Source: Glycera tridactyla (Eukaryota). From it: a stretch of 64,000 bases of DNA. The position numbers and the translations under genes are program-made. Where the stretch lies: positions 15,314,001-15,378,000 of the forward strand of contig OZ286462.1 in NCBI GenBank assembly GCA_965644265.1, written 5' to 3'. A model generated the notes under the pieces. That model did no database searches. It saw only the letters and a program-made list of their open reading frames with translations, and had not been told where the DNA came from. This document shows, piece after piece, positions 1,498-57,100 of this stretch (positions are counted from its first letter, which is position 1; each line of letters starts with the position of its first letter).

Positions 1498-1733
1498 ACT
1501 TCGATATTCTGAAGGGTTTCCTGGAGAAGTCGCGCACAGAGGTGGAGGTGTGGCGTGTGACGAAGGGCATCTCACCGGATCAAGCGCGGGAGATGCTCAA
1601 GCGCATGCGCGATGACCGACAGGTCAAGAACTATCTCGTGCTCACTACCCCTCCTCTCATTCGTCGCTTCTTTCGATCAGCTCGCAGATTGGGCATGATC
1701 TCCCCAACGTACAATTGGATGGTACCCAACCTC
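1498..1733 (+). CDS. iGluR-family receptor, exon A (amino-terminal domain)
   Basis: attacag|AC acceptor and CTC|gtgagt donor. Translates (D)FDILKGFLEKSRTEVEVW...MLKRMRDDRQVKNYLVL...ARRLGMISPTYNWMVPNL, matching the iGluR ATD 'LGM...Y.W/Y...NL' segment. Phase 1 in, phase 0 out. No upstream exons found in the window. Confidence 0.85.
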
Positions 1734-16524: not shown

Positions 16525-16740
16525 GTGTCAGATGATATTTCTAAGAACATTTTGGAGGATATCCAGGTGTCCGTGACAGCCATCAGTTTGGTGAATGAGA
16601 CAGAGCGAGGTCGTCATGGTGATCTTCTTGAGAATATAGAAGCTGCTGGCATTTTTGATGCGATACAGATGTTACTCAAGATCAAACGTGCAAATCTACG
16701 CCAGCTTACTGGGGAACAAATTCTCACCAAAATCAATCAG
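16525..16740 (+). CDS. iGluR-family receptor, exon B (ATD)
   Basis: ttgttgtccag|GTG acceptor and CAG|gtcagt donor, 216 nt, phase 0-0. VSDDISKNILEDIQVSVTAISLVN...EAAGIFDAIQML...ILTKINQ resembles 'NITGF.LV...EAAL.YDAV...' and joins in frame to exons A and C. Confidence 0.8.
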
Positions 16741-17593: not shown

Positions 17594-18901
17594 CTATTCG
17601 ATGGACTCGAGGTCATGACACAGTAGATATCGTCGGATTGAGTTGGGTAGATTGAGGGCCTCAACAGCAGAAGGCAGATAAAGATTTGCCTTACTACGAA
17701 GACAGAGACGACAAAGATGACGGAGAGAGATAGGTTCAGTAAAATAACGCATCAATCGAGCTATGTACACGCGCGCATGCGCACGGGAATCAATGCCTAA
17801 TTGGACGCCCTCCTCCTCCGATGTCAAGTCGAGTGTGGTCATGATCGACGACGGAGTCCTGTAACTGCCTGTTTCTGCGTCATCGTCGTCATTTTCGTCA
17901 TCACTGATGCGGTCATCCCCATCACAAATTTGCTCCTCATCAGAACTGGCATCTTCCTGGAAGAATGCGCGAACGTCGGCAGTGCTACATGCGGGTTCCG
18001 ACTGCACAGAGCGTGATGACGCCGTAAGGACGGACATTTGATCGTACGCCATTCTCTGCTGACGACGTAACTGTCGCATGGCATCTTTGGACGAGAGATG
18101 TTCGACGCGGATGTAATAGGCACGTTGAATTGTACGAATAGTTGCCTCGCCGAAGCGACATCCCGCCAATAGGAGGACATACGCCATGACGTAATTGCGG
18201 AATTGACGTAACGCATGACGGATCAAACTGACGTTTCTGCCACGATCATTATACAAGAGACTATTGACGTTACCGCCATGAATGATCAACTTCTTCACGG
18301 CGCTGAGTTTGTTACGATCGACGGCTAATTCGAGTGCCGTGCGGGGGCCGTACGCTACGCTGATCCGACGATTGATATCTGCTCCGGCTTTTATTAGTAA
18401 CTCCATCACGTTCGAATCTGGCCATCGCAAACTTCGCATCAGAGGCGTTGTATGACTACGATACCAAATAAAACTCGCACCTGCACAAAACTCCGGACTG
18501 CATCCATGAGCTAACAACTCTGATATCACCGATTTCATGGCTTGTGCCCTCTGCTCTAAGGCTTGATAGTCCGTGCTGTGAATTTGTTGAGCGTATGGTA
18601 GAAAGAAGTTCGGGGAATAGATATAATCGACGGAGGTTGCGAGTTGTAGTAGGGGCGTTGGCTGCAGACCCATGTCAGGTCGAACGCATACCTCTGGGCG
18701 TGCTCCGTGTTGTAGTAAGTATCGCACGATCTCCACGTCGAATACGGCCAAGGCACAGTAAAGTGCCACCTGTCCACTACAAGGGTCACTAATATTGACA
18801 TCAGCTTTGTATCTGATGAGACTCTCTATCATCGCCATGTTACGATCCAGAATGGCATACATCAAAGGGGTATAGAACTGGATACTGCTACACTCGAATG
18901 T
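17594..18901 (-). CDS. ASB-like gene, last exon (several ankyrin repeats, acidic linker, C-terminal SOCS box)
   Basis: ttctcttgtag|ACA acceptor, 435 codons plus stop. Ankyrin motifs TPLMYA, TPLLQLA, TPLMRSL, TALELAV and GADVN/GADIN. SOCS box PISLRHLCRLCLR...LNLPNSIRRYLL. Spliced product about 554 aa from ATG 22503. Confidence 0.95.
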   Translation of the reverse strand, partial: TFECSSIQFYTPLMYAILDRNMAMIESLIRYKADVNISDPCSGQVALYCALAVFDVEIVRYLLQHGARPEVCVRPDMGLQPTPLLQLATSVDYIYSPNFFLPYAQQIHSTDYQALEQRAQAMKSVISELLAHGCSPEFCAGASFIWYRSHTTPLMRSLRWPDSNVMELLIKAGADINRRISVAYGPRTALELAVDRNKLSAVKKLIIHGGNVNSLLYNDRGRNVSLIRHALRQFRNYVMAYVLLLAGCRFGEATIRTIQRAYYIRVEHLSSKDAMRQLRRQQRMAYDQMSVLTASSRSVQSEPACSTADVRAFFQEDASSDEEQICDGDDRISDDENDDDDAETGSYRTPSSIMTTLDLTSEEEGVQLGIDSRAHARVYIARLMRYFTEPISLRHLCRLCLRSKANLYLPSAVEALNLPNSIRRYLLCHDLESIE

Positions 18902-19419
18902 CTACAAGAGAAAACAAAGAAATAACGTTCAATAAATACTTATCTCGCACAAGAACGTGGTGATTATGACCCAACTTCAAAACTCCGAATACGGTTCGCT
19001 CTCTCAAACTGTGCACTTCCAGTGTAAGCTGTCATTAGTGTAGGACATGAATCTGTAGGTTTGTGTCTGCCTTGGGGTTTTCTTTGTGATGACAAGCTTT
19101 GCTTCTTCAAATGAGGTCTGTCTGTCTGTCTTTCCATCTTTCTGTCNNNNNNNNNNNNNNNNNNNNNNNNNNNNNNNNNNNNNNNNNNNNNNNNNNNNNN
19201 NNNNNNNNNNNNNNNNNNNNNNNNNNNNNNNNNNNNNNNNNNNNNNNNNNNNNNNNNNNNNNNNNNNNNNNNNNNNNNNNNNNNNNNNNNNNNNNNNNNN
19301 NNNNNNNNNNNNNNNNNNNNNNNNNNNNGCTCAGTTGCTTGCTCTTTACTCACCCCTCCCCCTCTATCTTTCACTCTGTCGTCCTCTCTCCCTCTCTCTT
19401 CCCCATCACGCTTACTCAC

Positions 19420-19572
19420 TGACATATCCTGGGCGTTGACATCGGCACCAGCTTGGATCAAGTACTCCGCCCCGCCTACCCAGCCAGCCTGTACTACCAA
19501 ATGCAAGGCGGTTGCTTTTCTTTTCCGCCAAAGAGGACCATTGTCAGATTCACCACCCAGCTTCACATACTC
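19420..19572 (-). CDS. ASB-like gene, exon 3 (first ankyrin repeat)
   Basis: aatctgcag|GAG ... TCA|gtgagt, 153 nt. ...TALHLVVQAGWVGGAEYLIQAGADVNAQDMS is an ankyrin consensus. Confidence 0.9.
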
Positions 19573-33371: not shown

Positions 33372-35520
33372 TTTGATTTGAAAATCTTTATTCAAGGAGC
33401 AAGGACAACGTCGTACTACGTGCTCAAAAGGTCAGCTTAACTATTAACAATAAACATATGTACAAGACAATTATAATGTATATAAGAAATGTGAGAGATC
33501 CCTGTAGTGTCGTATGTTGAACTATTAGGTATGTGAAAATATGGAAAATATGAAAAATCAGCAGTTACATACAAAGGTAACAGTATGGAGGTGGATGGCT
33601 GGAGGATAGTGAGGAGTGACTATATAGACTAGGTATAGTAGTATGAATATGTACAGCTGGCTATTCCAAAATTCGAAGACATTTTATATGGCTGTCAAAC
33701 TCGGGCAAGACGTGATGGCTAATCAATCAAAATGGTATCATGCCTAGATATGCATGTAAACAGATATTAATCAAACATAATATAAATATACACAGATATA
33801 CACAGGTGAAGATAAACATGAATCAAGGCCATATAGTTATTTACAGTGGTGAAGACAAATATAAGTTAAAACTATATGCCCCTGGTAGCTATGATGCTGG
33901 ATCATTGTGATTTTATGGGCATGGCAGATAAGCAAAAAGATATGATGGGCTAATGTGAACAAGAAATGGTATTCGAGATGGATGGTAGACATTACATCAC
34001 AAGCAGCCTTATAATTCTGTAAGATTTCCTGGCGTATCTTTCATATGCTGGAAAGTGCCTTGATGTGCTTTTTGAAATTTGAAATATTATTGGGAGACCG
34101 GATATGGTTAGGGATCGAGTTCCATAATTTGATTACTTGTGGAATAGTTCGAATCTCCATGAAATGAGTGCGGCAACGCCTGATTTCCAGGTCCAAGGTC
34201 TTGGTTTGCCTGGTTTCCCGACTAGAAATATTAGCTCGGTGGTGATAGATTCATGAAGTTGAGAAGTTCCTATTCAATGAACCAACTCGAACATTTCCAT
34301 AGATAGTTGCCTATGCAATAAGGTTTCAAGATATGGTACCTTTAGACTAGTGTGGCTATCACTTGCAGAGAACTGCGCCATCCTAGGCATTTGATAATTC
34401 TAAGCAACTTTTTTGACATACCTGAAGTCTTAACTTGGATTTTCCATTCATTCCACACAGGACATAACAATTAAAGCAGAAAAGATGTTGAATGAGGGAG
34501 TGATAAATGAACAGCGCTCTTTTTTCGGTAATGAATGGTCGAATATGAGAGAGAGCGAATCTCTGTGTCATGACCTTTTCTAATACATACTCGCAATAGT
34601 TATTAAAGGAAAGGTTTTCATCCAGCATGATGCCTAAGTATTTGTATTGACTAAGACGAGGTATATGTGTTCCCTGAAAAGCAAGTTGCTCTGCATCAAT
34701 TCTCTGCGTTTGCTGGTGAGTACCGAAAAACATTACACTAGATTTCTCCAGGTTCAAGGAAAGCTTCATGTATGCAAACCAACTTCGTAGTGTCGTGAGA
34801 TCATCTTCTAATTTTGTGATTATTTCGACTTCTGTTCTACCAGTTGCACATATGGCCGTGTCGTCGGCATTGTTTTAGGACTGATGGCAGATGGTTAACA
34901 TACAACACAAATAATAATGGGCCCAGAATAGAGCCTTGGGGTACTCCATGAGTAATTTCTAGGCGTTCAGATAAGACACTTCCCAGTTTCACTCTTTGAG
35001 AACGTCCAGTTAGGTAAGATTCTAACCAAGATGTTGCAGAGTATATGAAGCCTTCTTCGGTTAACCGTTGGATTAATCTGACGTGATCCACTGTATCAAA
35101 CGCCTTCTTCAGGCGACAGTCAGCTCATCATCAGCAATACTCAAATTCAAGAATGTTTCGGAGGGGCTCAAAAAGTCGAGTTTGCTTTTTTTGCAACAGA
35201 TGATGGACTTCAGAGATTTGTGGGTAATACTTTGGATGTTGAGAGATCCGAAACTAATGCTAGGCAAATTTGATAGAGCTGTTGATAAGTAGTTGATATC
35301 AGAAAGTGGAAGTGCGCTCGGGAAGACATGTGTTTCCCTGCGTCTGTTGAGGTACATGAGAATAAGGTAGTAGTATCTATATGGATTGTTACACTGGGAG
35401 AAGTGGCGTTATCTGAATAATCGTTGAAAAAAAAATCAGATATAAAATATAAGATATGATATATATTGTAATATAGAGAGCGGATGGGTCGAATCTTCTG
35501 CCTGAAATTTTTGACCAATA
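33372..35520 (-). mobile_element. Internally deleted CR1/L2-type LINE with recognisable 3' end
   Basis: Minus strand: endonuclease start (SLNIQS...SETFLN) fused at about 35110 to RT (LKKAFDTVDH, GVPQGSILGP). RT C-terminus LNLEKS...YKYLG...LWNSIP. 3' end AATAAAGATTTTCAAATCAAA at 33392-33372. Confidence 0.85.
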
Positions 35521-35799: not shown

Positions 35800-36065
35800 A
35801 TGTCCAGATACCATTGATCATGTACTTCTGTTGAAGCAACTTAAAAAAGTTGGATTTAGCGAAACTAGCACTAAATGGATAGCTTCGTACTTAGGCGGCC
35901 GCACTCAGGCAACAGAAATCGACCAAGCAGTGTCCCAATCTCTACCGGTCAGTTATGGAGTGCCCCAAGGATCGATAGTGGGACCTTTGCTCTTCATCTT
36001 GTACACTAACGACCTTAGACAGAATCTCGATTTCTGCCATCCTTTCCTGTACGCGGATGAAACTT
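35800..36065 (+). mobile_element. Short LINE RT fragment
   Basis: DTIDH...KWIASYLGGRTQ...GVPQGSIVGPLLFILYTND...YAD. Confidence 0.9.
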
Positions 36066-36490
36066 CACCCCGGCAAAAAACCTGAAATCTTCAAATCATC
36101 ATTTTAGTTGTCGAACCGCAGATTATATGGTGGACACGTGTATCACCACAGTTGCAGCAAGGTGTTGTCCTGATGACTTCACCTCAGCAAAAGTAGTAGA
36201 CGTAGTTGGTGGGTGCTGTAGCAGGGTGTCGTTGAAGGTCGGCTGGAACATCAAGCAGGAATTGCAGCAGGTTGTCATCCTGACGACTTCACCCGGCAAA
36301 ATCGGAAATGATCAAAGCGTCACCTCGGCAAAAGTAGAAGACGTAGTTGGTGGGAGCTGTAGTGGGGTGTCGTTCAGGGTCGGTTGGAACATCAAGTAGG
36401 AATTACAGCAGGGTGTCATCCTGACGACTTCACCCCGGCAAAACCGGAAATGATCAAACCATCATTCTCACTGTCAACCCGAGGATTACA
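36060..36490. repeat. About 141-bp degenerate tandem repeat, about 2.5-3 copies
   Basis: cgtagttggtggg at 36201 and 36342; acttcacc(c)cggcaaaa occurs three times. Confidence 0.75.
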
Positions 36491-38515: not shown

Positions 38516-41194
38516 GATCTAAACTACAACATTGTCCGTATGGACATTTGACATATAGTGAAAAAAGCCACAACTACATGACAGTCATTCTCCCAACACC
38601 CTTAACATTTCTATCAGGCCAACATTATATATTCTCACTTACATACCCATGTTCCCTGTGGGTTTGCACATGAGCTTGGGTATCACGCCTGAAACATAGT
38701 TCACAAGCATATATGACACACGTATGTGAGCACGTATCATATGTTGCTTATGGAATTATCCGTGTATGTTTCATATCATGGAGAACACAAGCAACCTCGA
38801 ATTACGCCGGAAGTTGTGACGGTGACAGGTGACTATTGGACTAGGCTCGACCTGGAATGACTGTGTCCATCCGCGAACCCGCACTACTTTCCGGAAGGTC
38901 ATGTCTTGTGATCAACATGGATCACTCCGATCTCACCAATTTCTGTATATGATAGCCACTCGGATTCGTGTGATTTCCCTGGAGATGTCATCATCATTAT
39001 GGAAAACATGCCTCCCACGATGATAGCAGCAGAGCGGATGTTGACTCTGACAACAGCACCCCCTGGTGTGCTACCACTATTGGCACCTTCATGCGATACT
39101 ACCTCCGAACAACAGGATAGGATTCTCTCAGAGTCCGCCATATTCGAATTGATTCCCTGCAGTTCATGTCTAAATTGAATCTACCTGAACTGTTGTATTT
39201 GGATCCATAACGAATACCACAGATTGAGTTGATCGATTTGCTCTGCTAATGGAGAGAGAATGAAAGTGGTTCGATGTCGCCGTGGTGCTGGTGCTGACGA
39301 TAGTGTTTCNNNNNNNNNNNNNNNNNNNNNNNNNNNNNNNNNNNNNNNNNNNNNNNNNNNNNNNNNNNNNNNNNNNNNNNNNNNNNNNNNNNNNNNNNNN
39401 NNNNNNNNNNNNNNNNNNNNNNNNNNNNNNNNNNNNNNNNNNNNNNNNNNNNNNNNNGATGGTTACAGTGATGGCCACGGCGTCATGTGTGAGTTTTATT
39501 GTCATTCTTGTCATTGTCATTGTTGCTGTTGTTGTTGATTTTTTTCTTGATGGTTTATATCATGGTGCTGACTCTAATTGAGGTTGAGATGGTCTTGAAG
39601 GGCGTCGAGGTCATTGGTGTGAGGTTGTGGAGCCCTAATTGTTGCTGGTATCAAGGGTTTCCGTGGTGGTGCTGGTCTGATGGTGGTGGTTATCAATGTG
39701 GAATATAGTGACGAATGTCAACGCTGCTCGCCCCCACATTGACTGGATAATCTGGCTGATACGTTCTTCTGAAGAATATTGCCTGTTGAGCTATCGAGAA
39801 GTGTGTTGTCTTGTCGGCAGAATATCTCAAACCTGTTTTGAATGTCACAAGGGATGCAGACAAGCGACAACCTTCATCACCATGCCAATCTCACTTGATT
39901 CTCATGAGACACTGAGAACACAGACAGTCAAGAAATAGCAAAGAATGTGAGCTATATTAGCTATATCTGAATGCTTGGCTTGATTCGCCAGGCAAATGAT
40001 GACCGTATTCCATTATTCTCACGCAAAGCCTTCATAAGTCATCCAGGACTGAGTATTGAACCGTAATCACTGCCCAATTCACTACCCAATTCAGATTGCG
40101 GTCTACCACGTATTCAATAATTCCGAAAAAGGAAAATTGGTTATTTGCACTATTGTACTAATTTCTAGGAGCTAGGTTTGATGCCGGATCCTGCACCACT
40201 TTGTTGTGCAGTGAACATCATCGTGAATTGCATTGCTTTATGAGCGAAACGTAAGGGATAACACAGCGTTGCTGAGCAACTTGTTAGATAGAGTGTAAAC
40301 CTTTCAATTCGCAAGACCGTTACGAGTGTATGCTCCATATCGAGGTTACTCGCCCAGTGGGCAACATGTCAGCCACATTTCAAGCACCCCCATAGAGTGG
40401 TGATATATATTGAGGATGAAGCAAAAGGTTAGGGTAGGCTATGATTCATGTGAACAATACACGTCAATATAGGGAAACATTTCAATGATAAAGTAATGTA
40501 TGACGTGTTGAGATATGGAAGATGCTCCAGAATTTTTTCATGATGGTCCCTTACTGTATTTTGTGAATATCATTTTGACTTAGATGGCAAACTTTGTATG
40601 ATGAAGCTCATAAAAATAACGATGTTGCGCAGGAGATGACTTAACTCCTGCACAATTGCCTGACTGAATTGATGATATTGACACTTTTTCGAAGAGACTG
40701 GTATGACATCTTATATCAATATTGTTATGCCTTGTATCACCCACATTGAGATGGTATGTGTATATCTTGTATACTCTGCGGATACCATCAACCTTTGGAA
40801 TTCACGAAATGAAGATGAGGATGACGGAAACTGCATATCATCTTCTGGCCGATAATTACATTGTTGTCAGAGAAGTGTATGCTATGTGTGGCACCTACGC
40901 TCCGATAAGTTCATAGCCATTCTGCCTCGAGTTGTGATGTTAGTATTTGCAACATGGGNNNNNNNNNNNNNNNNNNNNNNNNNNNNNNNNNNNNNNNNNN
41001 NNNNNNNNNNNNNNNNNNNNNNNNNNNNNNNNNNNNNNNNNNNNNNNNNNNNNNNNNNNNNNNNNNNNNNNNNNNNNNNNNNNNNNNNNNNNNNNNNNNN
41101 NNNNNNNNNNNNNNNNNNNNNNNNNNNNNNNNNNNNNNNNNNNNNNNNNNNNNNNNNNNNATCCAAGCTTATGTAGACCTTGTTCTGCTTGCAG

Positions 41195-41299
41195 ACTCGA
41201 TTCCAGGGTGTAACAGGACCTATCGAATTCGATCAGAACCGACGACGAATCAACTTCAAATTCAATATCACGGAATTCCGAACCAAGGAGTTCGTCAAG
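41195..41299 (+). CDS. iGluR-family receptor, exon C (end of ATD)
   Basis: ttctgcttgcag|ACT ... AAG|gtgagt, 105 nt. TRFQGVTGPIEFDQNRRRINFKFNITEFRTKEFVK matches the conserved 'FEGLTG.I.F....R.NF.L.I.E' motif. Confidence 0.92.
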
Positions 41300-41659
41300 G
41301 TGAGTCAATGGGCTACTACAACAGACAGACAGACAGACAAAGAGACAGACAGATGGACAGACAGTCATACAGACACATAAATATAGGGGCAGGAAGAGAG
41401 GCAGGTAAAAGGAGAAAAGGCGAGAAAGCATGTGTGAGAGAACAACTAGGATTGAGACGGAGAAAGGTAGAGCTGGATCGTTTTTTATGGAATAGGGTTG
41501 CTAGTGGAGTCACAGAATAATTACAACAGCAGCTCTAAGAAGATGAGAAACTCTCATGTATTAACAGTGCTCCTAGAATGAAATGAAATATTAGATATTC
41601 GAACTACGTCAAAAGCATTGGGGGAATGAAAGAGATGTTTCATACATGTGTAATTACAG

Positions 41660-41791
41660 GTTGGCGAATGGAGGGCCCTGCCACCTAGTGATCTTCGCAA
41701 GAAACTGGTGTGGATGCCAGAAGATGGCGATGATAGTTCGACAGGGATATTCCCGTTGAAAGGACGTGTATCTCGAGTAGTCACAATATTG
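41660..41791 (+). CDS. iGluR-family receptor, exon D (ATD-S1 linker)
   Basis: taattacag|GTT ... TTG|gtaagt, 132 nt. VGEW...FPLKGRVSRVVTIL matches 'VG.W...L..VTTIL'. Confidence 0.92.
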
Positions 41792-42605: not shown

Positions 42606-42809
42606 GAGAAACCATTCACGATGCTGAAAGAAGATCATGAGCTTCGCGAAGGCAATGACCGTTATGAAGGGTTTGCAGTGGACCTTCTCGAACTCATCGC
42701 CGAGGAACTGGAATTCGAATACGAAGTTTACATCGTACCCGATGGTCAGTTTGGCTCGAAGAAACCTACCGGCGAGTGGAATGGAATGATCGGAGAAGTG
42801 CTGAACGGG
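42606..42809 (+). CDS. iGluR-family receptor, exon E (S1 ligand-binding segment)
   Basis: tctttctag|GAG ... GGG|gtgcgt, 204 nt. EKPFTMLKE...RYEGFAVDLLELIAEEL.F.YE...DGQFGS...GEWNGMIGEVLNG is a canonical S1. Confidence 0.95.
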
Positions 42810-43077
42810 GTGCGTTATGATCTCTTGTCTGCTAGTGGCTTTTTGTTCTCCATGTAGAACTCCAGATGTCAGTTGAGTCCGACTGCCGCAGGATGTCAGC
42901 CCCCCGGAGGGGAGGGTGTGTGAGAGGTGTTGTGTGTGCCCAAGTGTGTGCTGATGTGTACATGTACGTGGGTGTGAGAGTATGCGGACAGAGTGGGTGG
43001 GAGTAAACTTCAGGGTGGGTTTCCACTCGGAACTTGACGGTGGATAGGTAGGGGAATCGGACATCCATATGGATAAA

Positions 43078-43078
43078 A

Positions 43079-43170
<92 letters not shown>
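43078..43170. repeat. (CAGA)n tetranucleotide microsatellite
   Basis: Direct reading. Confidence 0.95.
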
Positions 43171-44061
43171 GGATCTATGACATCCCCCCATTCATTCACA
43201 GCCATGGAAGAATCGCATCAGCCATTATGCCTAGTCACATATAAAAAGCCTGAGTGTGTTTTCGCTTGTCTCAATCTCTCTCATTCCGCATCATCGGCAT
43301 TGAAACAGGGTTTAAAGGTAATTCGCATGACGGGGATACACGTTTATGCTCAGGTCACGAAAGCCTTTCAACTACCATTGTCAACAAAATCCCTGAAAGA
43401 TTTGAGTCAATCTATGTATCCCTAAGACGACAAATACAAAGTGTGAGACAATGATATGCAGGTGTATGAATAATAGCTTGCTGCTGATATCGTCTCACCA
43501 GTAATTGCACATCACAAATATTCGTTCGCCTATATACTGCTATATGCAGATTTGTCCACACATCCATCGACACATTCTACTGAACAATGTGTTCAATGAC
43601 TGCATGCTCGAATCGGATTTTCACCCCCCCCCCGCCCAATTGATCAGGGATGAAATTTCAATTAGTTTTTGACCTTTACCTCACCTTCCTCCCAGAGAAT
43701 GAATGATAATGAAGATAAAGATGAAGATGTGATCAGGGATGTAGTTTCGAATAGTTATTGACCTTTACATGACCCTCCTTCCTGAGAATGGATGATAGTG
43801 AAAATAGAAATACAGTAGTGACATTCCATCAAGAAATTTGAGATACAATACGTTAAGCTTTGCCAGGATGTATCCCTCACAAAGCCTTGACATGTATCGG
43901 TTTAGGGCAAAACGGGCTGAGCAAATGTTCGGCTAGTCGGCTACACTTGAGAAATTGCAAAGGCTGCGGTGATTAAAACAAAAATGACACAGAATTAATT
44001 GCATGGGATGAACACTCTACAATCACCATCACTACCTAAATGACAAGTACTCATTCACACC

Positions 44062-46243: not shown

Positions 46244-47076
46244 AATGCGACGATGACAATGGCGCCACTTAGTATCAACGCCGACCGGGAGAGGGCCATC
46301 GATTTTACGAAGCCATTCAAAACACGCGGTATTGCTGTTCTGATGAAAACGCCGGAATCCCAAGCGTCCTATTTCCAGTTCCTGAAGCCACTTTCCACCA
46401 CTGTGTGGCTCTGTATACTCCTCGCGGTGTTAGTGACATCTGTTATCTTGTATGCGCTCGAGCGGTACAAAAACAAGTCGCGGCGTGGCGACACTCAGTC
46501 ATTTCGAGTGCGGGAGAGCTGTTGGTTTGTTTTTGGAAGTTTAGTTCAGGTGGGAACGGATGTGTCCCCAGTTTCCATTGCTGGTCGTATGCTCACCAGT
46601 GCATGGTGGTTATTTTCTCTTATGATGGTTAGCACATATACCGCCAATTTAGCCGCTTTTCTGACTGTGAAAAAGATCCAACCCCCTATCTCAACAGTTA
46701 CAGACCTGGCAGGCCAGGCTAAGATCCAGTTCGGCACTGTTAGAAACAGTGGAGTGGAGTCCTTCTTCAAGAAGACTAAAATTCCTGCATTCGCTGAAAT
46801 GTGGGCCTATATGGATGATGTCTTTGAGGACACAATGGTGAATAACACTTTAGATGGACTTGAAAGGGTGAAGCAGGGCAATTATGCATTTCTTTGGGAT
46901 AATACCGTGACATCATTTATGGCCAAAGAGGACTGCAAGTTCACTGAGATTGGCCCATCGTTTGATCCCAAGGGGTTCGGTATAGGGGTGCCACCCGGTG
47001 CCACTTATCGTGAACCTCTTTCTCTTGCGATTCTCAGGTTGGGCGATGATGGGAAAATATCCGAACTGGAGAACAC
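46244..47076 (+). CDS. iGluR-family receptor, exon F (end of S1, M1, M2 pore loop, M3, S2)
   Basis: tttttttcag|AAT ... AC|gtgagt. Contains APLSINADRERAIDFTKPF, M1, WFVFGSLVQVG, STYTANLAAFLTV, GTVRNSGVESFF and YAFLWD. Confidence 0.97.
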
Positions 47077-48174
47077 GTGAGTGGAACTGCCTTGNNNNNN
47101 NNNNNNNNNNNNNNNNNNNNNNNNNNNNNNNNNNNNNNNNNNNNNNNNNNNNNNNNNNNNNNNNNNNNNNNNNNNNNNNNNNNNNNNNNNNNNNNNNNNN
47201 NNNNNNNNNNNNNNNNNNNNNNNNNNNNNNNNNNNNNNNNNNNNNNNNNNNNTCCGTCCGTTTGTCTGTCCATCCTGCTATCTGTCTGTTCATCAACCCG
47301 TTGGTGTGCCATTATGTCAGTCTGTTCTCAATGTGTTGCACTGAATATGAAGGGTTTGGTATGCGAATCATTTATCTCATCATTGAAGGCATATCATCGA
47401 ATATATGATGTATCTGTCACAGACTATGAAATTTCATTGTGCACATTCCTACATCATACCTAGACGGTTTTTTTTTAAATCCTGCGATTCCACTAATGCC
47501 ATCAGCGTGAAATCTGCTCTTAATGAAATTGCGACTATTTGAGCGTTTTTTCGTGACAGATTACCAATGCAATATCATTTGCTCGGAACCTGCATCTAAA
47601 CAATTATGTACATAATGGGAAATGGCGAATGAGCAATTAGAGCAATTAGAGCAGTCCAGTCCACTGGTCATCTCGTCTTGGTGCTGAATACCAAACTACG
47701 CAGCGTTCCCACAGAGTGTCAAGGCTGACATAGAATAATTCCCTCATATTCACATGACTAGAGCCTCATGGAATCCCATGACAGGAACACAAAGTGAAAT
47801 AAGACTGATTCTATCCAATATTTCTTCAATCCTGCCTCCATACCAGAGACATATAATGTTAGGACATTTTTAATTATGTGATTCAACTGAGTGAAGGCAG
47901 CCAAAAATATTGTAGGTAATTTGTGTATGAATACAAGAAAGTTATGCACCACCCCTGCATAGTCCCGGGGGGGGGGGGTGGAGTTATATAATCGGACAGG
48001 GAGGTTGATGGGCGGGGATAAACAGGCAAGAAGTGGACCATGACGTTTTTTATTCACTTCTAATGCCTATAACTTCAATCCAACATGGCTGTCAGGCTTT
48101 CAGCATGAGTTTGAACTGCATGAGTTCGAGGCAGAAAACATTCTCCATTGTGTGACATGGCGCTGTTGTTGTAG

Positions 48175-48412
48175 ATGGTGGGGTGGTGGTAATTGCGAGG
48201 ACTTTACCAAGCCGACGGCGGATACTACCTCGGAGCTTCAGCTTGAGAATGTCGCCGGTATCTTCTTCATCCTTTTCGGCGGATTCGCCCTCTCCATCCT
48301 CATCTGGGCGCTTGCTCGTCTCCTCGCCATACCCAGGCAACGTTCAGCCAGGAAGGAGAACAGTAGTTATTCCTTACCAGATGCTAATGGTAGGTATCAC
48401 TCTCATCCCTGA
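48175..48412 (+). CDS. iGluR-family receptor, exon G (pre-M4, M4, start of C-tail); donor at 48389/48390 or read-through to TGA 48410-48412
   Basis: gttgttgtag|A completes phase 2 (ENT-WW). WWGGGNC...LQLENVAGIFFILFGGFALSIL is a canonical M4 region. AATG|gtaggt is a plausible donor. Confidence 0.93.
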
Positions 48413-50904: not shown

Positions 50905-53200
50905 ATACAGATATAGATACAGATACAGAATTTTGCATTGCATAAGATATTATACATGGATGGTATTTACAAAGGACCCTAACGGGTTTTATATATGCTT
51001 ATGCAAACAAGTACAAATTGGTACACATGAGAACAATAACAACTGTTTTTTAAGTCAGTATTTACACTATCATACACTCTTTCATTCACACATCCACTCT
51101 TTTACACTTGTGTATATCATGCTTGGTCAGAAAAACAGTAGAATATGTAATAACCATCATATTATAGTGCCATGAGAATACAAATGCAAATACAAGTAAA
51201 TATCGGGTGCCCAGTAAGGGTTATTCCCGTTGTACATAATTAAAAGCAGTGTCTGAAACAGTAGTTTAAGCAGAATATGGACACATGGCTATTGACACAT
51301 CTTCACCACTGATCATATGAGGTAGGAGATGTATAGGTATGTACAAGTGATGAACAATCACTCGGGTGCCCAATTGGGGTTGCTCAGGCATGAAAAAAAA
51401 ATGTTAGTATGCAACTGATCATATAAGATAGGAGATACACTGGTATGGACACGTGATGACCGATTATTGAGTGCCCAATTAGGGTTGTTCCCAGAGTAAG
51501 AAGAACTCTTCAATCAACATGCGCAGTATGTTAGTACCACATGATCATTGTCAAGTTCTCACCAATTTCTTTAGACTCGACATCGAGTCACATGTTCTGA
51601 CTTCGGGTCTAGCACAATTCCAGTAGGACACACCCCTTACAAGGAAGTTTCTATCACTGAACTTAAGATGCGAATGCGGTTTTATCAAAAGTTTGTTCTG
51701 TATGATCTTGCCATTTGCTCTAGTCAGAGGTCCGGAAATTCTTGGCGTTGCCCACTTGAAAAAGTCTGGGTATAGTACCTTCCCATTGGTAATCATACGA
51801 AACACTTCTATGATTGTATTCTGATGTCGTGAGTCAGCAAGATAGGGAATATTGAGCGTATCATGAAGAGATCCAGCAGAGTAATCCCAGCTTTTTTGAC
51901 AGATGACGCTCAGACATCTGTTTTGGGATACTTGAAGGCGTCCACTGAGGGTGGCAGAGCATGAGTCATAAACATAGTCCAAGTAAGTTAAAAGGGGATC
52001 GATAAGGCTTTTTTATAAGAATACCGCAGTATCTTTGCTGATTGAGGGTCTTAAATAATACAACGCTCTTCGACGAAAATCAACTTTCCTTATCAAATAC
52101 TCAATATGATCTTTAAATGTCAGGGTGGGGTCCCTCTGTACTCCCAGGTATTTATGTTTAGATGTTTGTACAACACACTGGTCGTTATACGATACTCAAA
52201 GCGGTCTACATCTGCGTAGCCATTGCTCGGTGCCGAAAAACATTGTGTTCGATTTGCTCGAATTCAGTGTCAATTTCATACGCCTGAACCAGTTGGATAT
52301 CAGAGCCAGGTCAAAATTTAATTCAGCTTCAATATCATCAACACAATTACCTCTTGCCAAGAGGGCTGTGTCATCAGCGTACAAAAAAGGGGTTGTATGG
52401 TCTAGACAATCGTTGATACTATTAACATAAAGAATGAATAGTAAGGGGCCCAGGATGGACCCCTCGGGCACCCCACACTCAATGGGTAGCTGCGAAGAGA
52501 TTATCCTGATTTTCGTTGCCTGAGTCCGCCCTGACAAATATGACTTAATCCATGCCAGACTGCTCTCATCAAAACCAAAGTGTTCCAACTCTTTAATTAA
52601 CAAGTCATGATCCACAGTGTCAAAGGCTTTTTTCAGGTCCAGGAAGAGGACTCCACTGGCCCTACCTTCATCGGCTCCCTGGTAGATCTTATCCGGGAGA
52701 CCCACAAGACAGCTGCCAGTGGAGAACCCCTTCCTGAACCCGAATTGAGCCATATTCAAGAGATTGTGTCTATCTATATATTTGGTTATCTGTACATGCA
52801 CCACTTTCTCAACAAGTTTCCCTAACACAGGCAACAGTGATATTGGTCAGAAGTTACCGAACCCTCTGGCCGACCCGCCCTTGTGAATAATGGTTACAAG
52901 TGCCTCTTTCCAGCTGCTCGGGGACTTGTTTGACATGACGGATAGATGAAAAATATAATCTAGGATTGGGCTTATAACAACTGCTGAGACTTTCAGGAAA
53001 TAGCTTGTGATCTCATCAACACCCGACGCTGAGGAGTTGCTGAGTTCCATAATATATTCCCTGATATCAGAAGGTGAGACATCACATAGAGTAAAATGGC
53101 TGTCAAAATTTGGGACATTCCGTGATTCTACAGTTTCAGGTTCAACAATCAGCCATCCGAGTAGATTGATAAAGGCGGGAGTACTTTTGAACATCCCTGA
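50905..53200 (-). mobile_element. 5'-truncated CR1/L2-type LINE (RT and C-terminus, probable 3' UTR and (TGTATC)n tail)
   Basis: WKEALVTIIHKGG, QFGFRKGFST, FLDLKKAFDTVDH, GVPEGSILGP, YADD and RGVSYWN (51551-53194). The extension to 50905 is inferred from the tail-like microsatellite and is less certain. Confidence 0.9.
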
Positions 53201-54027: not shown

Positions 54028-54143
54028 GATGTCAGTGAGTAAGTCAGTGAGTAAGCGTGATGGGGAAGAGAGAGGGGGGGGGGAGGAAGACAGAGTGAAT
54101 GATAAAGAGGGGGGGGGGGTGCGTAAAGAGCAAGCAACTGAGC
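54028..54143 (+). repeat. Inverted copy of the ASB exon-3 donor and intron start (19329-19425)
   Basis: atgtcagtgagtaagcgtgatggggaagagaga...taaagagcaagcaactgagc is present at both loci. Confidence 0.85.
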
Positions 54144-57100
54144 NNNNNNNNNNNNNNNNNNNNNNNNNNNNNNNNNNNNNNNNNNNNNNNNNNNNNNNNN
54201 NNNNNNNNNNNNNNNNNNNNNNNNNNNNNNNNNNNNNNNNNNNNNNNNNNNNNNNNNNNNNNNNNNNNNNNNNNNNNNNNNNNNNNNNNNNNNNNNNNNN
54301 NNNNNNNNNNNNNNNNNNNNNNNNNNNNNNNNNNNNNNNNNNNNNNNNNNNNNNNNNNNNNNNNNNNNNNNNNNNNNNNNNNAGATGGGCATACAGGCGG
54401 ACGAAGAAAATAGATGGGTTCACAGACAAAATTGCGTAGAGAACGACCTCACAGCTATGGTAAAAGAATTACTGTGTTGAACACTGTTGTCGATTGGATT
54501 AGAATCGATTCAATGTGGCAAATACCAGCAAATCTGCTTAAAGACAATTAGAATATCGATCGTTCATCCTCCACACCATCTCTCATCCCGACGGCCCCCC
54601 TGTATAAGTGAAGTATTCTCAGAAAGTGAAATTTCATCTTGTTTCGAGTCCTGCATATAGTTAAGAAGCAGTGTCAGGTCTGAGAGTCAACTTCGAGCTG
54701 TTAGAGAAATTAAGAACATTATTTCAAGGTTCATCATGTAGGTAGAAGTGTATCAGAAACGTCGGACACTTCCAGATCGGACGCTTCATTTGTGTTTAGG
54801 GTGCGCGGGAATGAAACTAGCGTGATATCGTAACATCCATCTCCCCTTGATCTGCAGACACTCAGAATATACCTTCTTTCTGAATGATTCTTGAAGTTTA
54901 CTGCAATAAAACATCCACCTTCCACGTGGGACTGATTCATAGATTGAAACGAGGGCAGTGGTTGTCTCAATGTACCCCTAGGCTAACCATACATAGGACT
55001 GATGTTTGTTGAACTCATATTAAAGATGATGGGTGCATCTCACATATTGTGATGATCTCCCTTTATGATCATACCATTGCTCTCGTTCTATTGGATTACA
55101 TACGACAAATCTGCTGATACATTTGGTTGCTCTCAGTGTTTGGAACGACAGATACATGGCCGCATGGTTCATGACAACGGATTCGAATGATTACACAGCC
55201 AAAAGACTGACCAACCACCTGTCATGTTCGGAGTGCACATTCAAAAGCTTATTGTGACATACTGAAGATAATAATCCCGGTTGTCTTTTTACCACTTAGC
55301 TATGAGCCATTTTTTTTCAGAGATGCACCCTCTCGGCAGCAACATAGACAACGGACACATATTGAATACATAGAAAATACAACAGTTTCATCGCAGAGGT
55401 AAACCTTCATGGACGTGACCCTCATACCTCAAATCCTTTCCTAGAAAATTAAAATCTGCAACTATTTCTATATGCAGGACTGGTGATTTTTCTCTACAGT
55501 CAAACTTCTGAGTAATTTGATTCTGGACTCGATTGCTGATACTGAAGCTCCATATGATGTTGTTTCTATGCCTTTTTCAATTATAGTGATGTGTCTAAAC
55601 ACCTAAACCTCCACACTCCCATTCTGTATTTCGCACCAAACTCAACCCGGTCATTCGACCATATATAAGACATACACAATAAATACTTTTGAGTTAGAGG
55701 AGCTTGTTTTGTATCGTATGTATGTTATTCTATTCTGACATAAAAGCGACAATCATACTGGGTTCCTTCAGCTTCTTCTGTGTGGAGGACGGATATAAAC
55801 TCATGTCATGGATAAGATGGTAAGAGTCAGGATCCGGTTCATCGGAGGGAATGGGGAGTTGGGTTGGGTAGTGTGCGGTAAGGTATGGTAGGGAGTAGAA
55901 TACGGTCGGAATGACGAGGTGGTCGGTATGGTTGGGTAGGTTACCGTAAGTAGGGCGGGGTAGGGTGAAGTAGACTAAGGTAGGGTGTGGTACGGTACGG
56001 TTGGTAAGGTAAATAGGGTCGGGTAAGATGAGGTAGAAAAACGTGGAGAACAGTAGGGTAGGTTAGGATAGGGAAGGGTGTACGGTATCGCGGGTGTTTA
56101 CTCGAGTAGCTCTATATCTAATGTGTGAAATATATTCAACATGGCTACCTTCGAACACGCAGTTTACGAGAGTAGGACTGGAACCAGAATGCCCCTTCAG
56201 AACTTATTCGGCCTGGTCACATTTTTTCCCTGTTTCCATTTTGCTGGGTTGATCTGACCATGTGTATCTCCAATTACAGCTGAACATTTACACTTGAAAC
56301 GATTTTACTTCAACTGCCACTATCTCAATATCCAAGACGCATCTAATCGATTGAGTTGATGAATGCCAAAAGTATCTCTCAAACTACGTTCTTCAGGTCT
56401 GGGTTAGCACTAGTAACAGGTGAATTTCGTAGTGTATACGTAGGCTACGTATCAGGAGGGCTGGGTTCTACAGGAGATCATTAATCATGGGGGAGATTGG
56501 CAATATCTGCCCTGTCGCGTGTGGATTGCTTTATACACAGACCATGTAGCGGATTACACGAGAGATGGACAACCGACCCACACCAGGATGGGGTCGATGC
56601 AGTACAAAATCCTTCATGGCGTATATGAATATTTGCTCAGGTGGTCATGATTGTTATCGTTCCCATCAGAGAGAAAGTGTACTTGGCTCAGCTGATTAAT
56701 GCCACAGAAGGGCAGTAGGATGATAGGTGTGACCAGTGAAATATGCTGCATGGCTGGAATATTAGGGGATTGGAAGCCCAATATGCTTCATCTCGCGGTC
56801 AATGTCATTGACCTCTCTGACATATATTGGTACGAACCTAGTAGATATCTTTTTGAAGAATGCCCACTTGTGTCTAACTTAGATCATATTTTCTGTGAGA
56901 GCCAAGAAGGTCAGGGAGTGATTCAATCCATATCATTTCACCTCCACAAAAGGACAGAAAACATGAGTCTTGAGAGACTAAACTCAGGTCATTTTACCTC
57001 CCCTCAAAGACCACAAAAATCCGACTCTACTCGTATTCTTTCACCATCATTCACGGACCATTTCCCTTTTGAGAGAAGCTCATAAAGTAAGGACCATAAT

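What the first reader, a model, noticed from the sequence alone, without database searches (positions are those of the whole stretch)
46253..46900. Glutamate-receptor-family channel whose ligand pocket looks built for glycine/D-serine-type ligands, not glutamate
Seen: S1 APLSINADR keeps the alpha-carboxyl Arg (GluA2 R485 equivalent, 46286-46288), S2 reads GTVRNSGVESFF (46748-46756 = S-G-V where GluA2 has G653-S654-T655), and AFLWD (46895-46900 = W-D where GluA2 has L704-E705). S1 has DGQF rather than DGKY. Established: GluN1 (S687/S688/V689, W731/D732, F484) and GluD subunits show this pattern, and Val and Trp at these sites explain glutamate exclusion in GluN1. The rest of the protein (Q-type pore, KKTKI..F..MWAYM, M4) is non-NMDA-like and lacks the vertebrate delta insert. 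Inference: a delta/epsilon/orphan AKDF-type invertebrate receptor gated by glycine, alanine, D-serine or GABA.
Basis: partly seen in the sequence, partly recalled or inferred. Interest (0 to 1): 0.72.

Follow-up and report, generated by a model that had tools for sequence, protein, structure and literature searches.

The report
Worm glutamate-receptor gene with glycine-type pocket
This is an apparently intact channel gene of the glutamate-receptor family, probably from an annelid worm, whose binding pocket carries the residues typical of glycine/D-serine-binding relatives rather than glutamate-binding ones. It belongs to a conserved group in worms, molluscs and ribbon worms that has been seen in family trees but, in the literature I could search, never tested for function.

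Summary
The 833-nt exon at 46244-47076 (+) encodes the end of S1, M1-M3 and most of S2 of an ionotropic glutamate receptor. It has Arg at 46286-88, S-G-V at 46748-56 where GluA2/GluK2 have G-S/A-T, and W-D at 46895-900 where they have L/M-E.

Seven exons with canonical splice sites give an open 653-residue frame. The 5' end lies upstream of the window.

The scaffold is kainate/AMPA-like: the best solved matches are GluK2/3. In a careful tree the gene falls in a strongly supported clade of 28 sequences. Every named one is from a lophotrochozoan: mollusc, annelid or nemertean. That clade lies outside the delta, AMPA and kainate clades, so it is an orphan or Phi-like AKDF receptor. It is not delta or epsilon.

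All 28 sampled clade members have S/T653 and W/F-D. All 20 AMPA/kainate sequences have G653 and x-E. The pocket is therefore a conserved state shared by non-AMPA/kainate AKDF receptors. It is not a one-off.

Published rules predict a non-glutamate ligand, most likely glycine, D-serine or alanine. GABA is not excluded. I found no functional test of any member.

Molluscan members were already predicted to bind glycine (Zeng 2021).

Verdict: new member of a known kind, of moderate interest.

The parts
1498..1733 (+). Amino-terminal-domain (ATD) exon
   Evidence: Profile of full-length clade relatives hits this frame (E = 3.4e-11). tblastn with Pecten and Tubulanus proteins also hits it. AG/GT sites, in frame.
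16525..16740 (+). ATD exon (weakly supported)
   Evidence: The profile hit is weak (E = 0.19) but colinear: profile positions 240-301, between the two neighbouring exons. AG/GT sites and phase 0 keep the frame open.
41195..41299 (+). Last ATD exon
   Evidence: Pfam ANF_receptor matches the end of its profile (2.3e-05). Clade profile E = 4.8e-08. AG/GT sites.
41660..41791 (+). ATD-LBD linker and start of S1 (...RVSRVVTIL)
   Evidence: Matches the ...KVVTII / ...RVVTIL start of S1 in relatives. AG/GT sites, phase 0.
42606..42809 (+). S1 exon (EKPFTML...EVLNG); Phe at the GluA2 Y450 position is at 42750-42752
   Evidence: Pfam Lig_chan-Glu_bd 3.7e-19. tblastn with Sinanodonta and Capitella proteins. 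Same exon boundaries in orthologous locus L024. Pocket column.
46244..47076 (+). Core exon: end of S1, M1, pore loop M2, M3 (STYTANLAAFLTV) and most of S2
   Evidence: Homologues occur as exon-sized open frames of 273-276 residues in many lophotrochozoan assemblies. Boundaries are conserved in L024.
46286..46288 (+). Arg at the GluA2 R485 position (binds the ligand's alpha-carboxylate)
   Evidence: Conserved 36/36 in the clade.
46547..46549 (+). Gln at the pore Q/R site; Asp at +4 is at 46559-46561
46748..46756 (+). S-G-V at the top of helix F (GluA2 G653-S654-T655)
   Evidence: Clade conservation: S 41/41, G 38/41, V/I 41/41.
46895..46900 (+). W-D at the GluA2 L704-E705 positions
   Evidence: Conserved 42/42 in the clade.
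46976..46978 (+). Phe at the hinge position GluA2 Y732
   Evidence: Conserved 40/42 in the clade.
48175..48412 (+). M4 exon (WWGGGNCEDF...M4...), short tail and stop codon
   Evidence: tblastn. tblastx to L024. AG acceptor, frame open to TGA at 48410-12. An alternative GT donor at 48390 cannot be excluded.

Best explanation
The window holds the 3' four-fifths of an apparently intact gene for a channel-forming ionotropic glutamate-receptor subunit. The gene belongs to a clade, so far seen only in lophotrochozoans, of the AMPA/kainate/delta/phi (AKDF) subfamily.

The channel part is AMPA/kainate-like: Q at the Q/R site, acidic +4 residue, an SYTANLAAF-type gate, M4, and the LBD disulfide cysteines.

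The clamshell keeps the residues that hold an amino acid's backbone: Arg485, Pro478, Ser480 and an acidic residue at 705. The residues that hold glutamate's side-chain carboxylate are replaced. G653 becomes S and T655 becomes V. Trp at 704 and Phe at 450 are inferred to fill the space.

Inferred mechanism: a small neutral amino acid closes the clamshell and opens, or as a co-agonist helps to open, a cation channel. Glycine, D-serine or alanine is the most likely ligand; GABA is less likely. Glutamate is a poor or null agonist.

Shown here: gene structure, family, clade, pocket residues and their conservation. Inferred: the ligand, gating, subunit stoichiometry and expression.
For: Family and intactness:
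- Searches give a seven-exon, 653-residue open frame with all AG/GT sites.
- The exon boundaries are conserved in an orthologous locus.

Pocket mapping by two alignments: F450, P478, S480, R485, S653-G654-V655, W704-D705, F732.

Published rules:
- Positions 653/655 are G/T in glutamate binders and S/non-polar in glycine binders, with R485 and an acidic 705 fixing the backbone (PMC6307864).
- Helix-F SSV/SAV marks glycine/D-serine-selective NMDA subunits, and all glutamate-selective receptors in that paper's alignment had G at the first position. G674S alone gives GluA2 glycine and D-serine responses, and GST->SSV gives alanine/glycine preference (PMC13648236).

Comparison with sequences of known ligand:
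- GluD1/2 have SAV/WD.
- The D-serine/glycine-activated Trichoplax TRIADDRAFT_18262 has SSV/WD with Ser at 480.
- The sea-star orthologue of the GABA-gated delta has SSL/WD, with Val at 480 and Gly at 478. The window protein has S480, P478 and V655, so it is nearer the glycine/D-serine set.

Purifying selection on the pocket: near-invariant in 41-42 sequences from several phyla.
Against: - I found no functional test of any member of the clade in the papers searched.
- S-G-V, with Gly in the middle, is not among the motifs tested in the papers read.
- Mutagenesis shows the motifs are imperfect predictors. A cnidarian epsilon receptor with SQP responds to glutamate, and pocket residues alone do not set selectivity in deltas (PMC13648236, PMC10861852).
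- An oyster receptor placed as early-branching delta gave no currents in oocytes (PMC10861852). I could not tell whether it belongs to this clade.
- Expression of the window gene is not shown: no sequencing run was listed.
- The first ATD exons and the signal peptide were not found.
Confidence: 0.6

Rival explanations
1. It is a GABA-gated excitatory channel, like the delta receptors of sea stars, acorn worms and acoels.
For: GABA-gated invertebrate deltas share S653, W704-D705 and R485 (PMC10861852; my alignment of the Asterias, Saccoglossus and Convolutriloba relatives). Gly at 654 may enlarge the pocket. The AU test does not reject a sister relation of the gene's clade to delta (p = 0.21).
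Against: The delta relatives of the GABA-gated receptors have Gly at 478, Val/Ile at 480, Leu at 655 and Tyr at 450. The window protein has Pro, Ser, Val and Phe. These match GluD2 and the Trichoplax D-serine receptor better at positions 480 and 655. The gene is outside the delta clade.
Confidence: 0.15
2. Despite its motifs it is an ordinary glutamate-gated AMPA/kainate-like channel.
For: The closest solved relatives are GluK2/3 and GluA2, even for the pocket-bearing S2 segment alone. Exceptions to the motif rule exist, such as a glutamate-responsive receptor with SQP (PMC13648236). NCBI names relatives 'glutamate receptor 2-like' or 'kainate 2-like'.
Against: All 20 AMPA/kainate sequences sampled have G653 and x-E705. 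None of the 28 clade members does. The Thr that binds glutamate's gamma-carboxylate is Val/Ile in 41/41. GST->SSV or SAV in GluA2 drastically lowers glutamate potency (PMC13648236).
Confidence: 0.1
3. It binds a ligand but does not gate on its own. It would be an obligate co-agonist subunit (GluN1-like role) or a delta-like synaptic organiser whose channel stays silent in homomers.
For: Vertebrate deltas with the same pocket type are not gated by ligand, and an oyster relative gave no currents (PMC10861852). The genome holds a close paralogue with Gly at the Q/R site at C10:89.98 Mb, and further pocket variants on the same chromosome. That is compatible with heteromers.
Against: The gate, pore and M4 are conserved. 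Wild-type invertebrate deltas do gate (PMC10861852). Nothing in the sequence marks an inactive channel.
Confidence: 0.2
4. It is a decaying or untranscribed gene copy.
For: No RNA evidence could be obtained. The 5' exons are not all found. Assembly gaps lie in the introns.
Against: The 653-codon frame is open across seven exons with canonical splice sites. The core exon is 73% identical to an orthologue with the same exon boundaries. Every pocket and gate residue is conserved.
Confidence: 0.04

Closest known systems
Molluscan 'Phi' (GluF I-IV) and 'Zeta' iGluRs of Zeng et al. 2021 (PMC8437780); the 'lophotrochozoan phi clade' or 'AKDF group II' of PMC12226733
   Same: These are mollusc and annelid AKDF receptors outside AMPA, kainate and delta. 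Some scallop members were predicted to bind glycine from positions 653/655. The nearest full-length relative of the window exon is a Pecten maximus protein (XP_033742742.1, 62% identity).
   Different: I could not match accessions, so equivalence is inferred from position in the tree and from the species. Deuterostome Phi subunits are reported never to have Q at position 586 (PMC6307864), whereas this gene and most of its clade do. Annelid and nemertean members extend the group beyond molluscs.
Delta receptors: vertebrate GluD1/GluD2 (D-serine/glycine binding, not ligand-gated) and invertebrate GluD (GABA-gated)
   Same: S-x-V/L at helix F, W-D at 704-705, Arg485 and Q at the Q/R site.
   Different: The gene lies outside the delta clade. 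It lacks the 7-residue vertebrate insert after helix F. It has Phe rather than Tyr at positions 450 and 732, and Pro rather than Ala/Gly at 478.
NMDA glycine-binding subunits GluN1/GluN3
   Same: The pocket logic is the same: helix-F S-S/A-V and W-D (PMC13648236). From my own recollection of GluN1 (F484, P516, T518, R523, S688, V689, W731, D732), the window protein agrees at nearly every contact except T->S and S688->G.
   Different: The scaffold is not NMDA-like. No NMDA chain is among the best 60 solved matches, even for the pocket segment. The pore has Q where NMDA subunits have N. No NMDA sequence could be put in my tree.
Kainate receptors GluK2/GluK3 (closest solved structures)
   Same: 36-40% identity over S1-M4, the same M1-M3 and gate, and the KK[ST]KI...MWA[FY]M segment.
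   Different: G-A-T/M-E in GluK2 against S-G-V/W-D here, and Tyr against Phe at positions 450 and 732.
Trichoplax epsilon receptor TRIADDRAFT_18262 (GluE3alpha), activated by D-serine more than by glycine (PMC13648236)
   Same: Ser at 480, S-S-V, W-D and Arg485.
   Different: It belongs to a different subfamily and served as the outgroup (100/100 split). Identity is 32%.

Membership tests
Ionotropic glutamate receptor superfamily | S1-S2 clamshell interrupted by M1, pore loop and M3, followed by M4; an SYTANLAAF-type gate | tested here: met
   Pfam Lig_chan and Lig_chan-Glu_bd. GluK/GluA at E about 1e-67. STYTANLAAFLTV is present, and the M4 exon was found.
AKDF subfamily (AMPA/kainate/delta/phi) | Falls with AMPA, kainate and delta sequences to the exclusion of epsilon sequences | tested here: met
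   Careful tree: the two Trichoplax rows (one the epsilon receptor TRIADDRAFT_18262), on which the tree was rooted, are split from all others at 100/100. The gene sits among the AKDF groups. No NMDA or Lambda sequences were in the tree.
Delta class (GluD) | Placement inside the clade holding vertebrate GluD1/2 and invertebrate GluD | tested here: not met
   The delta clade has support 98/95 and excludes the gene. The gene's clade has 98/97. A sister relation of the two clades is not rejected (AU p = 0.208).
Delta class (GluD) | Vertebrate-type insert after helix F | tested here: not met
   46 residues lie between positions 655 and 704, against 53 in GluD1/GluD2. Invertebrate deltas also lack the insert, so this feature alone is weak.
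AMPA or kainate class | Placement inside the AMPA or kainate clade; pocket G653-x-T655 and x-E705 | tested here: not met
   AMPA 100/99, kainate 100/98 and AMPA+kainate 100/99 all exclude the gene. The pocket states differ.
Phi class (GluF) | Placement with deuterostome GluF sequences, sister to AMPA+kainate | tested here: inconclusive
   The clade groups with AMPA+kainate and one Ptychodera protein at 90/75. No certified GluF sequence was available to me. Q586 is present here but is reported absent from deuterostome Phi (PMC6307864).
NMDA subfamily (GluN1/GluN3) | Closest relatives are NMDA subunits; Asn at the pore N site | tested here: not met
   No NMDA chain is among the best 60 solved matches for the exon or for the pocket segment. 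The pore has Gln. This was not tested by tree.
Glycine-type ligand pocket (published sequence rule) | Arg485 and an acidic 705 kept; Ser at 653; non-polar residue at 655; bulky aromatic at 704 | tested here: met
   R, D, S, V and W at these columns in two alignments. The rule is from PMC6307864 and PMC13648236.
Glycine-type ligand pocket (function) | Glycine, D-serine or alanine binds or gates, and glutamate does not | not testable with these tools
   Needs electrophysiology or binding assays. The tools here do not return model coordinates and offer no docking.

The most novel reading that the evidence does not exclude
This conserved family of annelids, molluscs and nemerteans forms fast excitatory cation channels gated by glycine, or by D-serine or alanine. 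The channels combine a GluN1-like pocket with an AMPA/kainate-like, Q-pore scaffold. If so, glycine would act as an excitatory fast transmitter or ambient signal through iGluRs in lophotrochozoan nervous systems. The glutamate pocket of AMPA/kainate receptors would be the derived state within AKDF.
Probability: 0.3. Interest if true: 0.6.

Novelty: new member of a known kind. Interest (0 to 1): 0.35.

Why it matters
No receptor of this clade has a known agonist in the papers I could search. The clade is widespread, with mollusc, annelid and nemertean members, and its pocket is almost invariant. One oocyte experiment on a member with a complete cDNA would settle the ligand for a whole receptor class. 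It would also show whether excitatory glycine, D-serine or GABA signalling through iGluRs exists in protostomes, a question that Rosano et al. 2024 left explicitly open.

For annotation, relatives of this gene are named 'glutamate receptor 2-like' or 'kainate 2-like', which probably misstates their ligand.

The finding itself is not surprising to a specialist. Non-glutamate pockets are common in AKDF and epsilon receptors, and the molluscan relatives were already flagged as candidate glycine binders.

Tried and rejected
- **RNA evidence.** The look-up of sequencing runs listed no run, so splice junctions and expression could not be checked and read laying was not used.
- **Published names.** I tried to tie the clade to published names through supplements.
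  - The oyster GluD sequence of PMC10861852 could not be read from the stored supplement.
  - The stored part of the Ramos-Vicente alignment has no 'PLSIN' string. Capitella CAPTEDRAFT_92293 is not in their gene list. The file is cut, so this is inconclusive.
- **Delta membership.** Rejected by the tree. 'Sister to delta' could not be rejected.
- **Word searches by length.** The exon-sized query could only reach fragments. A profile query was swamped by vertebrate AMPA/kainate proteins. The amphioxus delta query gave delta references. The large search was then used to get full-length neighbours of any length.
- **Possible transcript.** A contig holding S1 and the core without an intron (P0029) could not be shown to be RNA.
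- **Structure prediction.** Not run. The tools return no coordinates and no docking, so a model could not discriminate ligands. The fold is already certain from sequence.
- **Human entries.** Two human UniRef entries came back. They went into no tree and no pocket table. In one search the longer one was among the proteins of 780 residues or more passed once through a phmmer step that located the start of S1.
- **N runs.** They were left as they are.

Full report
**1. What is in the sequence**

Window 46244-47076 (+) is one coding exon. An AG acceptor precedes it and a GTGAGT donor follows at 47077. Read one base past the donor, to 47077, it translates as 278 codons without a stop. It carries Pfam Lig_chan (7.9e-35) and the end of Lig_chan-Glu_bd.

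Its best solved relatives are kainate receptors GluK3/GluK2 (232 bits, E about 6e-68), closely followed by GluA2. The exon encodes the last strand and helix of S1, M1, the pore loop, M3 with STYTANLAAFLTV, and nearly all of S2.

**2.

The alignment to GluK2 printed gives these pairings:
- APLSINADR opposite APLAITYVR, so the Arg is kept.
- GTVRNSGVESFF opposite GAVEDGATMTFF, so S-G-V stands where GluK2 has G-A-T.
- YAFLWDNT opposite YAFLMEST, so W-D stands where GluK2 has M-E.

A separate MAFFT alignment with a rodent GluA2 sequence gives the same columns. In mature GluA2 numbering, which I assigned from motifs, the protein has F450, P478, S480, R485, S653, G654, V655, W704, D705, V708 and F732.

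In one search I first mislabelled the Y450 column.

The pore has Q at the Q/R site and D at +4. The stretch between helix F and W-D has 46 residues, as in GluK2, against 53 in GluD1/2. So the vertebrate delta insert is indeed absent.

**3. Gene model**

Homologues were used as guides: tblastn, two profile searches of all open frames and tblastx to an orthologous locus. Seven exons were placed:

| Exon | Coordinates | Content |
|---|---|---|
| 1 | 1498-1733 | ATD |
| 2 | 16525-16740 | ATD, weakly supported |
| 3 | 41195-41299 | last ATD exon |
| 4 | 41660-41791 | linker and start of S1 |
| 5 | 42606-42809 | S1 |
| 6 | 46244-47076 | core |
| 7 | 48175-48412 | M4, tail and stop |

All have AG/GT sites. 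Joined, they read as one open 653-residue frame ending in TGA.

The intron at 16741-41194 is 24.45 kb long. It holds an antisense ankyrin/SOCS-box frame, in agreement with scan note s1-303011.

One further ATD exon lies about 1.0-1.2 kb upstream of the window (E = 4.8e-18). The first exon was not found.

The three LBD/TMD exon boundaries are the same in locus L024, which carries the 73%-identical orthologue P0001. They also agree with the annotated Sinanodonta, Capitella and Mya proteins.

Expression could not be checked, because no sequencing run was listed.

**4. Relatives**

- The word search found 71 homologues. Most are exon-sized frames of 273-276 residues from lophotrochozoan assemblies.
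- The window's own genome (2.04 Gb; window at C10:15.31-15.38 Mb) has a close paralogue at C10:89.98 Mb. More distant ones lie at 90.14, 34.9 and 43.76 Mb, besides AMPA-like and kainate-like genes.
- The exhaustive search gave full-length neighbours, named:
  - Pecten maximus XP_033742742.1 (62% identity)
  - Elysia and Plakobranchus 'glutamate receptor 8'
  - Babylonia, Ostrea, and the nemerteans Tubulanus and Lineus
  - the annelid Owenia
  - Aplysia GluR6, in a neighbouring subclade
- Earlier scan notes call this genome an annelid. In the trees the gene sits in the half of its clade that holds Capitella teleta, and the molluscs form the other half. That fits an annelid source but does not prove it.

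**5. Phylogeny**

The careful tree has 67 rows and 403 columns, was built under LG+C20+F+G4, and is rooted on the two Trichoplax rows, one of them the epsilon receptor TRIADDRAFT_18262.

| Group | Rows | Support (bootstrap/SH-aLRT) |
|---|---|---|
| AMPA | 10 | 100/99 |
| Kainate | 10 | 100/98 |
| AMPA + kainate | 20 | 100/99 |
| Delta (vertebrate, tunicate, amphioxus, ambulacrarian, acoel, one nemertean) | 16 | 98/95 |
| Clade holding the window gene (all named members lophotrochozoan) | 28 | 98/97 |

The window gene's clade groups with AMPA+kainate and one Ptychodera protein at 90/75. A tree that forces it together with delta is only 3.9 log-likelihood units worse (AU p = 0.208).

So the gene is not a delta, AMPA or kainate receptor. 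Which of them its clade is sister to remains open.

This matches published descriptions of a lophotrochozoan Phi-like or uncharacterised AKDF group (PMC8437780, PMC12226733). I could not match accessions, and I had no certified Phi, NMDA or Lambda sequences.

**6. The pocket in context**

Within the gene's immediate clade:

| Position (GluA2 numbering) | Residue | Count |
|---|---|---|
| 485 | R | 36/36 |
| 653 | S | 41/41 |
| 654 | G | 38/41 |
| 655 | V or I | 41/41 |
| 704 | W | 42/42 |
| 705 | D | 42/42 |
| 732 | F | 40/42 |

Over the 67-row tree:
- All 28 members of the larger clade have S/T at 653 and W/F-D.
- All 20 AMPA/kainate rows have G at 653 and x-E.
- Deltas mostly have S/T-x-V/L and W-D.
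- The two Trichoplax rows have SSV/WD.

The 'non-glutamate' signature is therefore the common state of AKDF receptors outside AMPA/kainate. The window gene retains it rather than inventing it.

**7. What the pocket predicts**

Ramos-Vicente et al. (PMC6307864) state the rule. R485 and an acidic 705 fix the amino-acid backbone. Positions 653/655 are G/T in glutamate binders and S/non-polar in glycine binders.

Wang et al. 2026 (PMC13648236) report the following:
- Every glutamate-selective receptor in their alignment has G at the first helix-F position.
- G674S alone gives GluA2 glycine and D-serine responses.
- GST->SSV or SAV drastically lowers glutamate potency and favours alanine/glycine or D-serine.

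The same paper shows exceptions and warns against firm prediction.

Rosano et al. 2024 (PMC10861852) show GABA-gated invertebrate deltas with S-S-L/W-D. They also show that pocket residues alone do not set delta selectivity, and that an oyster relative gave no current.

Against sequences I could align, the window protein agrees better with GluD2 and the Trichoplax D-serine receptor (polar residue at 480, Val at 655). It agrees less well with the sea-star delta type (Val at 480, Leu at 655, Gly at 478).

Phe at positions 450 and 732 is a feature of this clade. From memory only, it matches GluN1.

S-G-V itself has not been tested in the papers read.

**8. Verdict**

'Orphan AKDF with a glycine/D-serine-type pocket' holds. 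'Delta' and 'epsilon' do not. The agonist is inference.

The gene is a new member of a known kind that is functionally uncharacterised in the literature I could search.

Noticed in passing
window 17594-18865 (-), also 18964-19566 (-): An open frame with ankyrin repeats and a C-terminal SOCS box lies antisense inside the receptor's 24.45-kb intron (16741-41194). Pfam gives Ank 6.6e-14 and SOCS_box 4.2e-09.
   Followed up: partly
window 52196-52834 (-); also 34383-35091 (-) and 35831-36085 (+): Reverse-transcriptase fragments lie downstream of the gene and in the long intron. RVT_1 scores 2e-30 for 52196-52834; the others look RT-like by eye only. They are probably decayed non-LTR retrotransposons.
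   Followed up: partly
G000:C10 at 89.98, 90.14, 34.9 and 43.76 Mb (loci L010/L005/L006, L003, L002, L004): Four paralogues of the same clade sit on the same chromosome. Their helix-F motifs differ (SGV, TYA, SHV, SHT), all have W-D, and their Q/R-site residues differ (G, G, L, L). The set could supply heteromer partners with different pores.
   Followed up: partly
P0346 (Aplysia californica GluR6, NP_001191542.1), P0341, P0342: A molluscan subclade next to the gene's clade has a genomically encoded Arg at the Q/R site and no acidic residue at +4, with SQT/SQI and W-D in the pocket. Aplysia GluR6 was listed as an 'orphan' in PMC5225553.
   Followed up: no
P0324 and P0326 (Owenia fusiformis); L003; P0038; P0043: An annelid subclade has T-Y-A/C at helix F. 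A Tyr near this site was proposed to block the pocket in some amphioxus epsilon subunits (PMC6307864). These may be ligand-independent subunits.
   Followed up: no
P0329 (Ptychodera flava XP_070554380.1): This hemichordate protein has SQP/W-D and Q586. It branches beside the gene's clade and AMPA+kainate. It may be a deuterostome counterpart (Phi or 'group II'), but its place is unresolved.
   Followed up: no
window 41316-41370 and 42950-43190: Runs of the unit GACAGACA, reading TDRQ or SVCL in translation, flank the receptor's exons and create long spurious open frames on both strands.
   Followed up: no
window about 39300-39480, 40954-41160, 47096-47260 and 54140-54390: Runs of N lie in the introns and downstream of the gene, one of them only 35 bases before the exon at 41195. 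They were left untouched. A short exon hidden in one of them cannot be excluded.
   Followed up: no
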